63,838 nucleotides of DNA from Sminthopsis crassicaudata (Eukaryota), in assembly GCF_048593235.1 (NCBI RefSeq), contig NC_133617.1, positions 626,677,120-626,740,957 on the forward strand, written 5' to 3'. Below, one piece after another: positions 11,596 through 28,334 of this stretch (the stretch's first letter is position 1; every line of letters starts with the position of its first letter). The translations under genes and the position numbers were made by a program. The notes under the pieces are model-generated. The model was not told where the DNA came from and did not search any database. It was given only the letters and a program-made list of their open reading frames with translations.

Positions 11596-12102
11596 TCTCC
11601 CTCATTGAATTAGCTCAAATGAGACTTGCCTATTCTTTTTCCATTCTCCCCTCTTTTGTAAAAATGTTACTTGTGCATCTGTTTTATGTGAGTTAATTTC
11701 CCTAATTCTTTCTCTTCCTTCCCCTTTCAAGGAATCCTTCTTTTTCACCACTCCATTTATATGAGATCATTGGTACATAATTAATTTGTACCTGTGTTTT
11801 CTGTCATTGTACGATCCTTTTAAGAGCCCTAATAATAAAATTATGATTTCTCTTTCATGTCTGCTTTTTTAATGCTTTTCTAAAGTCTTATGTTTGAATG
11901 TCCAATTTTCTATTCAGCTCCATCAGGAATATTTGATGTCCTCTATTTCTTAACCGTTTGTTTTTCCCCTACAACTTTATATTCAGTTTTGATGATGGGT
12001 TATTCTTGGTTGTATTCTTAGCTTCTTTGCCTTCTAGAATATCATATTCCAAGCTTTTCAGTCTTTTGGTGTGGTAGTTGCTAAATTTTGCATGATTCTG
12101 AC

Positions 12103-12486
12103 TGATACTTCAAATTCAACATCATCTCCTACTTTTAGCTCCTACAGGTTGCCATTGTACTGTGAACAGTGGAAGAAAAGTCTAGCTTGACGTTCTGAAC
12201 ACTGAATAAATCCATAAGAGGTCAGCAGTTTTTCAATAACCCCAGTTTCATGCAGTGCTGCCGAAGTACCATTGGGGTACCCGTTGTGTCCATTGTTGTG
12301 GAGAAGGTTTGGATCAAAGCTCATCTCACAGTGATAATCAAACATTGCACTTTCAGTAGTATTTGCTGATTCTTCTTTCTCAGCACACGTTTCAAAGGAT
12401 GAAAATTTCTAGTATATTTTTTTTAAAAAAGAGAGAGAGCAAGAGGAAATGATCTACCAAGCTAATAAGAGATCCGACTGCTGCTG
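12103..12486 (-). pseudogene. CSDE1: CSDE1 (UNR) processed mRNA fragment: 162 nt of 5' UTR plus codons 1-74
   Basis: From ATG at 12324: MSFDPNLLHNNGHNGYPNGTSAALHETGVIEKLLTSYGFIQCSERQARLFFHCSQYNGNL*ELKVGDDVEFEVS, the CSDE1 N-terminus/CSD1 with R>H and Q>TAG. Upstream sequence matches the recalled CSDE1 5' UTR (ttagcttggtagatcattt...aagaagaatcagcaaatactactgaaagtgcaat). Confidence 0.97.
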
Positions 12487-13799
12487 AATGATTTCTTTGT
12501 AGCTACTTTCAATAGTCTTTCCTTGACCTGGAAGTTCTGATATTCAATCATAATATTTCTTGGAGTTTTTATTTTGGGATCTTTTTCAGGAGATAATCAG
12601 GGAATGCTTTCAATTTCTATTTTGCCCTCCAGTTCTAAGATATCAGGGCAGTTTTGCTTTATAATTCCTTGAAAAATATGTATAGGCTCTTTTTTTAATC
12701 ATGGCTTTCATTCTAAAATTATCTTTCCTTGATCTAGTTTCCATATCAATTGTTTTCTGGTAAGATGTTTCACATTTTCTTATACTTTTTCATTCCTTTG
12801 ACTTTTATTTGATTCTTTTAAAAATATCTCATAAGTTTTCACTTGCCCAATTCTAATTTTTATGGAATTGCTTTCTTCAGTGAACTTTTGTACCTGTTTT
12901 TCCATTTGTCCAATTCTACTTTTTTAAGGAATTATTTCCACATTGTTAATGAAGCTGTTATTTCTCTTTTCATAAATTTCTTCCATTGCTCTCATTCTTT
13001 TCCCAATTTTTCATTTATCACTCATTTGATTTTTTTTTTTATCATGTTTGTACTCTTTCTTAAGTTCTTTAACTTTTATAGTTGATGGAATGAGATCCTG
13101 AAGAACACTGGAGGGGATAAAATCAAGATCACAATTAAGGAGTTTTTCTTGGAAAAGAAAAGCAACATAACCTCAAAGAGAAGTTGGTTGAAGATACAGA
13201 AAAAATTTGGGAAGGAAGAAGAGATAACATGGAACTGTTGTAACTAGGTGCTTGCTTTTTTTTTTTTCTCAGTAAAACTAAGATGGCCTCATTTTATTGG
13301 GATAAAAGAGGGAGGCATAAGGTTTTTCCAGCTTTCTTTGCATTGAAAGGAAACCTTTATAAGATGCTGCTACTTATTGTAAAACAGAGGGAAACTATAC
13401 TATCACCAGAGCTGCCTTTTGTTGACCTTACATTAGAATTTGTCTATATCCTGTGGAATTTTCCAAAAGCTAGGTCCTTTGAATTTCCCTCCAGAATGAC
13501 AAGCACCATATGATCACACCATTTTCTTTGGAGAGGAAAGAGCTGACAAAACTATTACCCTATGTCCTAAATTTGGAAGTCTTTATCAGAGATATGGAGT
13601 TGTCATCTGGGACATGTCTCAAATGTCTCGATTTAAAGTTTAGAAATCTCTTTAGTAGTTAGATGGTGGAACTATATAAAGTATACCTTGTTTATGTAAT
13701 TATTGTGCAACTAGGGAAAAATCTCATGACCTGTTTGAGCTTCAGTTTCCTCATCTGTAAGAGGAGAATAACAATACTTGTACCTCCTACCTCTAGATC

Positions 13800-28202: not shown

Positions 28203-28334
28203 NNNNNNNNNNNNNNNNNNNNNNNNNNNNNNNNNNNNNNNNNNNNNNNNNNNNNNNNNNNNNNNNNNNNNNNNNNNNNNNNNNNNNNNNNNNNNNNNNN
28301 NNNNNNNNNNNNNNNNNNNNNNNNNNNNNNNNNN
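28203..28334. other. Assembly gap (132 N) in GA-rich low-complexity sequence
   Basis: Run of N. Confidence 1.

What the first reader, a model, noticed from the sequence alone, without database searches (positions are those of the whole stretch)
12103..12486. Internal slice of spliced CSDE1 mRNA inserted into an old L1, with no poly(A) and no TSD
Seen: 384 bp made of 162 nt of 5' UTR and the first 74 codons of CSDE1. It is cut at both ends, has no A-tail and no flanking direct repeat. L1 sequence stops at ...catgattctgac and resumes at aatgatttctttgtagc. The insert keeps several CpGs and differs from the recalled human protein at few positions (R>H, Q>stop, D>E), while the host L1 is heavily decayed. 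Established: canonical L1 TPRT retrocopies start from the poly(A) tail, are 5'-truncated and have TSDs, so a 5'-end-only fragment is the opposite of the usual product. Recalled but unverified: the UTR|ATG and GGAG|ATGAT joins are exon junctions, so the template was spliced RNA, and ~16 nt of L1 consensus are missing at the site. Inference: an endonuclease-independent, RNA/cDNA-templated double-strand-break repair insertion, with short tg/tga microhomologies. It also carries part of the CSDE1 IRES-containing 5' UTR.
Basis: partly seen in the sequence, partly recalled or inferred. Interest (0 to 1): 0.72.

Follow-up and report, generated by a model that had tools for sequence, protein, structure and literature searches.

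The report
Spliced CSDE1 cDNA patch in L1
A young 384-base piece of spliced CSDE1 messenger RNA, cut at both ends and lacking the usual tail and flanking repeats, sits inside a much older L1 repeat of the dunnart genome; it is most likely a scar of DNA-break repair, a rare but already described kind of event.

Summary
Window 12103-12486 on the minus strand is 162 nt of CSDE1/UNR 5'UTR, the complete 199-nt start-codon exon and the first 23 nt of the next exon.

In orthologous genes of other vertebrates, introns of about 2.45 kb and 0.7-1.3 kb separate these three pieces. The template was therefore spliced RNA.

There is no poly(A), no abutting direct repeat and no other CSDE1 exon in the 63.8-kb window.

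The flanks are one L1 ORF1 RNA-binding domain, interrupted at one point and in the same orientation as the insert.

The insert carries only two replacements in 74 codons, R25H at a CpG and Q61stop. That gives a divergence of about 1% (upper bound about 5%). The flanking ORF1 has 10 stops and at least 2 frameshifts in 230 codons, or about 20-30%. Equal age is rejected (P 1e-6 to 3e-3), which rules out a template-switch chimera made when the L1 itself inserted.

Best reading (0.6): a doubly truncated cDNA/RNA-templated patch at a double-strand break. This matches class 2 templated sequence insertions, RT-product-mediated break repair and endonuclease-independent retro-insertion.

Not verified: the size of the target deletion, microhomology, the empty site, and reads across the junctions.

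It is a new member of a known kind, of modest interest.

The parts
12487..12923 (-). Host L1 ORF1, upstream part (coiled coil and RBD-like domain). It ends in codons ..KKS plus 2 nt of the next codon at the junction, and holds 2 stops and at least 2 frameshifts.
   Evidence: PF02994 pos 57-83/98, E 0.074; top four PDB hits are LINE-1 ORF1p; query 8-35 aligns to 2w7a 58-85; 28/30 Atlas hits PF02994.
12325..12486 (-). 162 nt of a CSDE1 5'UTR exon (its 3' part). It is joined directly to the start-codon exon and holds 2 CpGs.
   Evidence: colinear match to L008:3295-3481 (83-84% identity). That exon ends at a GT donor and lies about 2.45 kb upstream of the ATG exon. In L008 a likely splice acceptor lies about 23 nt further upstream.
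12126..12324 (-). Complete 199-nt CSDE1 start-codon exon (codons 1-66 plus 1 nt).
   Evidence: 92.5-94% identity to the orthologous exon in L001-L004 and L008-L010. In those contigs an intron follows where the insert continues with the next exon.
12103..12125 (-). First 22-23 nt of the following CSDE1 exon (through codon 74). Homology is certain to 12104; 12103 may be parental or filler.
   Evidence: matches the start of the next exon in L002, L003, L004, L008 and L009, which lies 0.7-1.3 kb downstream of the ATG exon.
12250..12252 (-). Codon 25 is CAT (His) where all orthologues have CGT (Arg), a CpG transition.
12142..12144 (-). Codon 61 is TAG where all orthologues have CAG (Gln), a premature stop.
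11845..12102 (-). Host L1 ORF1, downstream part. It resumes with ..VRIMQNLA.. in the same orientation and has 8 in-frame stops in 85 codons.
   Evidence: Its correspondence to human ORF1p ..IRLTADLSAE.. is recalled, not tool-tested.
10930..11400 (-). The same L1 continues into the N-terminal (endonuclease) part of ORF2. This rests on reading motifs only.
   Evidence: The Pfam scan of the short pieces gave nothing.

Best explanation
A chromosomal double-strand break inside an old, dead L1 ORF1 was repaired by inserting a patch copied from spliced CSDE1 mRNA. One route is that a broken 3' end primed reverse transcription inside the mRNA, at codon 74, and synthesis ran towards the 5'UTR. The other route is that end joining captured a free partial cDNA. 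Either way the patch was joined without L1 endonuclease, so it has no poly(A) and no target-site duplication, and roughly 20 nt of the target were lost.

Shown: spliced origin, both truncations, absence of tail and TSD, and a young insert in an old L1. Inferred: the break, the enzyme that did the reverse transcription, and the joining pathway. The patch has since decayed slightly (R25H, Q61stop) and nothing indicates a function.
For: - Identity and two exon joins.
- No A-tail and no abutting direct repeat.
- The L1 ORF1 frame stops and resumes around one point.
- No other CSDE1 exon in 63.8 kb.
- Insert divergence is about 0.012 (95% upper bound 0.04-0.055) against about 0.17-0.35 for the L1 (lower bounds 0.055-0.165). 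Equal age is rejected at P 1e-6 to 3e-3.
- Of the 7 insert-specific differences, 5 are synonymous. That fits change in the selected parent gene, not in the dead copy (P 0.014).
- 3 of 4 conserved coding CpGs are kept.
- The stop and the R25H change show that this is not contaminating cDNA.
- 6 DNA runs from 2 samples and 2 studies of the same organism hold 64-77% of the sampled words of 11700-12900.
- The structure matches published cases. Spliced Pcnt and Inadl fragments were captured at Cas9 breaks in mouse zygotes, without poly(A) and with short microhomology (PMC4516963). Class 2 templated sequence insertion polymorphisms have the same features (PMC5110952). So do endonuclease-independent L1 insertions with target deletions (PMC1920257).
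Against: - No pre-insertion allele was seen, so neither the break nor the exact deletion and microhomology is demonstrated.
- The parent gene of this species was not available. The age therefore rests on protein conservation, and the L1 age on a crude stop-codon clock.
- The shared orientation of insert and L1 has a 50% chance expectation and is equally what a template switch would give.
- No overlapping microhomology is visible from the sequences in hand.
Confidence: 0.6

Rival explanations
1. The break was patched by copying DNA, not RNA. The donor would be a CSDE1 processed pseudogene that already existed elsewhere in the genome, used through fragment capture or through microhomology-mediated template switching during repair or replication.
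For: The junction structure would be identical: no tail, no TSD, both ends truncated. The stop and R25H could have been inherited from such a donor. Sen et al. report DNA-templated filler at endonuclease-independent loci.
Against: No such donor is known. None lies in this window. The insert is very close to the functional protein, so a donor would itself have to be young. Ono et al. argue for RNA origin from the enrichment of exonic and spliced captures.
Confidence: 0.15
2. Two steps: an ordinary L1-mediated (TPRT) CSDE1 retrocopy, 5'-truncated at -162, landed in the L1. A later deletion of about 3.5-4 kb then removed everything from codon 75 through the poly(A) and the 3' TSD, plus about 20 nt of L1.
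For: Canonical retrocopies are far commoner than break-repair patches. This genome has young ones nested in L1 (earlier scan notes). The 5' junction alone is compatible with TPRT.
Against: The deletion would have to end within about 20 nt past the retrocopy after spanning several kb. It would also have to occur within the roughly 1% divergence time of the insert. The plus-strand end at 12102 does not resemble a TTTT/AA nick site. My rough estimate is about 30-fold lower odds than the one-step route; this is inference, not a computation on data.
Confidence: 0.12
3. Assembly or library artefact: a chimeric read or a contig mis-join placed a CSDE1 pseudogene fragment inside the L1.
For: Junction-spanning reads could not be examined. 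Only 64-77% of the sampled words are held by the DNA runs.
Against: The L1 ORF1 resumes within about 7 codons of where it stopped, in the same orientation, which a random mis-join would not produce. The fragment carries pseudogene mutations, so it is not mRNA contamination. Two samples from two studies hold most of the stretch.
Confidence: 0.06
4. Template-switch chimera. While this L1 was being reverse-transcribed at its own insertion, the enzyme jumped to a CSDE1 mRNA and back to the L1 RNA.
For: Insert and L1 have the same orientation. L1 RT does switch to cellular RNAs; an example is the GPD2 fragment in Sen et al..
Against: Insert and L1 would then be the same age, and equal age is rejected at P 1e-6 to 3e-3. 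It also needs two jumps, with a return to nearly the same L1 position.
Confidence: 0.03

Closest known systems
Class 2 templated sequence insertions / TSIPs (Onozawa and Aplan; PMC5110952)
   Same: A short patch templated from a distant transcript, sometimes with several spliced exons. No TSD, no poly(A), no cryptic poly(A) signal, and micro-deletion at the target. Interpreted as germline or early-embryo double-strand-break repair.
   Different: Those are human polymorphisms with a known empty allele. Here the genome is a marsupial's, fixation status is unknown, no empty allele has been seen, and junction microhomology or filler is unverified.
[quoted passage not shown] 2015; PMC4516963)
   Same: Internal slices of spliced mRNAs a few hundred nt long (Pcnt 6803-7599, Inadl 1527-1836), truncated at both ends and without poly(A).
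   Different: Those breaks were induced experimentally and were often accompanied by 1-7 nt of microhomology. Here the break is inferred and natural, and the slice comes from the 5' end of the mRNA.
Endonuclease-independent (non-classical) L1 insertion (Morrish 2002; Sen et al. 2007, PMC1920257)
   Same: No TSD, 3' truncation without a tail, deletion of target DNA, and a proposed role in break repair. Cellular mRNA fragments are occasionally co-inserted.
   Different: In those cases the inserted RNA is L1 itself. Here no new L1 sequence accompanies the mRNA piece, and the L1 present is the old target.
Canonical processed pseudogene made by L1 target-primed reverse transcription
   Same: An intron-less copy of a cellular mRNA.
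   Different: It lacks the mRNA 3' end, the poly(A) tail, the TSD and a recognisable endonuclease site. It is the 5' end that is kept.

Membership tests
Canonical L1/TPRT processed pseudogene | Contains the mRNA 3' end followed by a poly(A) tail | tested here: not met
   The insert ends at codon 74. The next bases are L1 ORF1 and there is no A-run.
Canonical L1/TPRT processed pseudogene | Target-site duplication abutting both ends | tested here: not met
   One search finds no abutting repeat. The 8/9-nt imperfect repeat is offset by 3 and 1 nt, and each copy lies in its own ORF1 codons.
Canonical L1/TPRT processed pseudogene | Intron-less (spliced template) | tested here: met
   Two exon joins were checked against orthologous genomic contigs.
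Class 2 templated sequence insertion / RMDR / endonuclease-independent retro-insertion | No TSD and no poly(A) | tested here: met
Class 2 templated sequence insertion / RMDR / endonuclease-independent retro-insertion | Donor sequence truncated at both ends | tested here: met
   The 3' truncation at codon 74 of a protein of about 800 residues is certain. The 5' truncation is inferred from a distant orthologue, whose exon starts about 23 nt further upstream.
Class 2 templated sequence insertion / RMDR / endonuclease-independent retro-insertion | RNA origin shown by exon-exon joins | tested here: met
Class 2 templated sequence insertion / RMDR / endonuclease-independent retro-insertion | Small deletion of target DNA at the site | tested here: inconclusive
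   The upstream flank ends at 2w7a residue 86-87. The downstream flank resumes at about residue 95 by my recall of human ORF1p. That gives a gap of about 6-7 codons. No marsupial L1 reference could be obtained.
Class 2 templated sequence insertion / RMDR / endonuclease-independent retro-insertion | Microhomology or filler nucleotides at the junctions | not testable with these tools
   This needs the pre-insertion L1 sequence and this species' CSDE1 mRNA, and neither was available.
Class 2 templated sequence insertion / RMDR / endonuclease-independent retro-insertion | An empty pre-insertion allele exists in relatives or in the population | not tested
L1 template-switch chimera (U6-L1 type) | All parts are made in one retrotransposition and so have equal age | tested here: not met
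   Equal divergence is rejected at P 1e-6 to 3e-3.

The most novel reading that the evidence does not exclude
The patch is more than a scar. It keeps 162 nt of the IRES-bearing CSDE1 leader, the start codon and a 60-codon open frame. It could therefore be transcribed and act as a decoy for factors that bind the CSDE1 leader, or give a truncated cold-shock-domain peptide.
Probability: 0.02. Interest if true: 0.55.

Novelty: new member of a known kind. Interest (0 to 1): 0.3.

Why it matters
Natural, datable examples of break repair by captured reverse-transcribed mRNA are few. They are known mainly from human polymorphisms and from nuclease-cut mouse zygotes. A clean marsupial case, young and sitting in a target whose original sequence can be recovered from other L1 copies, would show that the pathway works in the marsupial germline. 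It would also give exact junctions for asking which polymerase and which end-joining route acted. It changes no concept: the mechanism class is already described, and the insert has no sign of function.

Tried and rejected
By caution I also sent none of the whole insert 12103-12486. That left no read-level check, no parent-gene letters and no empty-site test.

3. A marsupial L1 ORF1 reference, needed to size the gap and date the L1, could not be obtained:
- The window holds no second ORF1 copy.
- The word search with a 47-aa ORF1 piece found nothing. The 36-aa piece was too short for that tool.
- The large HMMER search with the 36-aa piece gave 0 hits.
- A degenerate two-motif pattern scan of metagenome contigs gave 4 chance hits with no L1 similarity.
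- Pfam and PDB scans of other short L1 pieces gave nothing.

4. A plain comparison of stop density (Fisher P 0.2) was too weak. I replaced it with opportunity-scaled estimates.

5. Contigs behind proteins P0002-P0005 and P0012 (eutherian-type QDLKVG, possibly human) were deliberately not fetched.

6. No L1 consensus was built.

7. Hidden TSD: rejected (and codon reading).

8. Rest of the mRNA nearby: rejected for the exons I could test.

9. The earlier-findings index has no CSDE1 note and no note near this place.

Full report
**What is there**

The feature lies on the minus strand. Read from 12486 down to 12103 it has three parts: 162 nt of leader, an ATG at 12324, and 74 codons with a single stop at codon 61.

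The first 60 residues match the solved first cold-shock domain of human UNR/CSDE1 (1wfq, E 5e-27). R25H is the only difference over residues 13-60. They also match CSDE1 N-terminal fragments of many vertebrates at 95-98% identity.

Several of those database fragments are read-throughs from genomic contigs. They leave the CSDE1 sequence exactly after ..KVG, and some enter it exactly at the ATG, which marks two intron borders. The residue after Q61 is E in the non-eutherian fragments.

**Exon structure**

I fetched the genomic contigs behind the E-type fragments and compared them with the insert.
- The start-codon exon is 199 nt and corresponds to window 12324-12126, at 92.5-94% identity.
- In every contig a GT intron follows. 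The next exon, whose first 22-23 nt correspond to window 12125-12104/3, lies 0.7-1.3 kb downstream.
- The leader (12486-12325) matches one upstream exon (L008:3295-3481). That exon ends at a GT donor about 2.45 kb before the ATG exon.
- In that orthologue a pyrimidine tract and a CAG acceptor lie about 23 nt upstream of where the homology to the insert begins. The insert therefore probably starts inside that exon.

The organisms behind these contigs are not given. They are not human (QELKVG type), and their downstream exons carry the CSD and CSDE1 Pfam families.

**What is absent**
- There is no A-run at the 3' end.
- No direct repeat abuts the insert. An imperfect 8/9-nt repeat (12092-12099 and 12488-12496) is offset by 3 and 1 nt from the junctions, and each copy lies in its own ORF1 codons.
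- No other CSDE1 exon occurs anywhere in the 63.8-kb window. I tested this with the orthologous loci, which include the following cold-shock-domain and CSDE1-domain exons.

**The host**

The 36 residues encoded just upstream of the insert, on the same strand, align to the L1 ORF1 RNA-binding domain.
- Pfam PF02994, profile positions 57-83 of 98, at E 0.074, which is below the cut-off.
- The four best PDB hits are all human LINE-1 ORF1p, with query 8-35 aligned to 2w7a 58-85.
- 28 of 30 ESM-Atlas neighbours are PF02994 clusters.

Downstream of the insert the same frame family continues (..VRIMQNLA..KAWNMIF..). I recognise this from memory as the stretch following that domain. Further on I recognise the start of ORF2, although Pfam found nothing on those short pieces.

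So one L1 ORF1 is interrupted at a single point, and the L1 and the insert point the same way. By the human alignment about 6-7 codons of ORF1 are missing, but the position of the downstream flank is recalled, not computed. I could not obtain a marsupial L1 to settle this.

**Relative age**

The parent protein is essentially invariant across amniotes, so replacements in the insert date it.
- *Insert.* Two replacements (R25H at a CpG, Q61stop) over 166 replacement opportunities give a divergence of about 0.012, with a 95% upper bound of 0.04-0.055.
- *Insert-specific differences.* Seven separate the insert from four orthologues, and five are synonymous. That pattern is unlikely if they had arisen in a dead copy (P 0.014). 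They are therefore mostly lineage differences of the living parent gene.
- *CpGs.* Three of four conserved coding CpGs survive, and the insert has 5 CpGs in all. The 600 nt of L1 on either side have 0 and 4.
- *Host L1.* The flanking ORF1 has 10 in-frame stops and at least two frameshifts in 230 codons. Scaled by stop opportunity this gives a divergence of about 0.26-0.35. Using only TAA and TAG stops, to avoid CGA hypermutability, it gives 0.17-0.22. The lower bounds are 0.055-0.165.
- *Equal age.* A common divergence for the insert and the L1 is rejected at P 1e-6 to 3e-3.

This is a crude clock, but the gap is about an order of magnitude.

**Mechanism**

The shared orientation made a template-switch chimera, formed when the L1 itself inserted, a serious rival. 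The age gap disposes of it.

A canonical retrocopy followed by a deletion is possible. That deletion would have to span 3.5-4 kb, stop within about 20 nt beyond the copy, and happen within about 1% divergence time. I rate this roughly 30-fold less likely; this is inference.

The plus-strand end at 12102 does not resemble an L1 endonuclease site.

The remaining and best reading is a break in the old L1 patched with a partial CSDE1 cDNA. The patch was either primed from the broken end inside the mRNA or captured ready-made, and was sealed by end joining with a small loss of target. The sequence alone cannot separate a direct RNA or cDNA donor from a DNA copy of an unseen CSDE1 pseudogene.

**What is known**

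The structure matches three published classes:
- class 2 templated sequence insertion polymorphisms in humans (PMC5110952);
- spliced Pcnt and Inadl fragments captured at Cas9 breaks in mouse zygotes (PMC4516963);
- endonuclease-independent L1 insertions with target deletions (PMC1920257).

It is a new member of that kind.

**Assembly**

The stop and the R25H change show that this is a genomic pseudogene fragment, not cDNA contamination. Six DNA runs from two samples and two studies of the same organism hold 64-77% of the sampled words of 11700-12900. No read was laid across the junctions.

**Limits and rules observed**
- I did not fetch contigs behind the eutherian-type fragments, which might be human.
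- I built no L1 consensus and did no joined spliced-model search.
- That the genome is the fat-tailed dunnart comes from earlier scan notes. I did not test it.

Noticed in passing
window 12061-12324 (minus strand): The CSDE1 reading frame runs in frame into the downstream L1 ORF1 frame (..EFEVS-VRIMQNLATTTPKD-stop). The odds of this by chance are one in three. The stop at codon 61 makes it moot.
   Followed up: partly
window 12421-12434: Inside the UTR part there is a T6A8 run where the distant orthologue (L008) has a long CT-rich pyrimidine tract. It is internal to one exon and colinear on both sides, so it is not a tail or a second junction.
   Followed up: partly
window 11560-11595 and 10400-10570: A (GT)n microsatellite lies between ORF1 and ORF2 of the host L1. 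A long (TA/TATA)n run lies further into the element.
   Followed up: no
window 12646-12789: The host ORF1 needs two frame changes here. The conserved ..ETRSRKDNFR.. motif sits in another frame than its neighbours. This is further evidence of the L1's age.
   Followed up: partly
window 11700-12900: Runs of the same organism labelled as probable RNA hold 36%, 17% and about 10% of the sampled words. Either the locus is transcribed (possibly intronic) or these runs are DNA. Runs of other organisms hold 7-11%, probably the conserved CSDE1 part.
   Followed up: no
window 28203-28334: A run of N (assembly gap or masked stretch).
   Followed up: no
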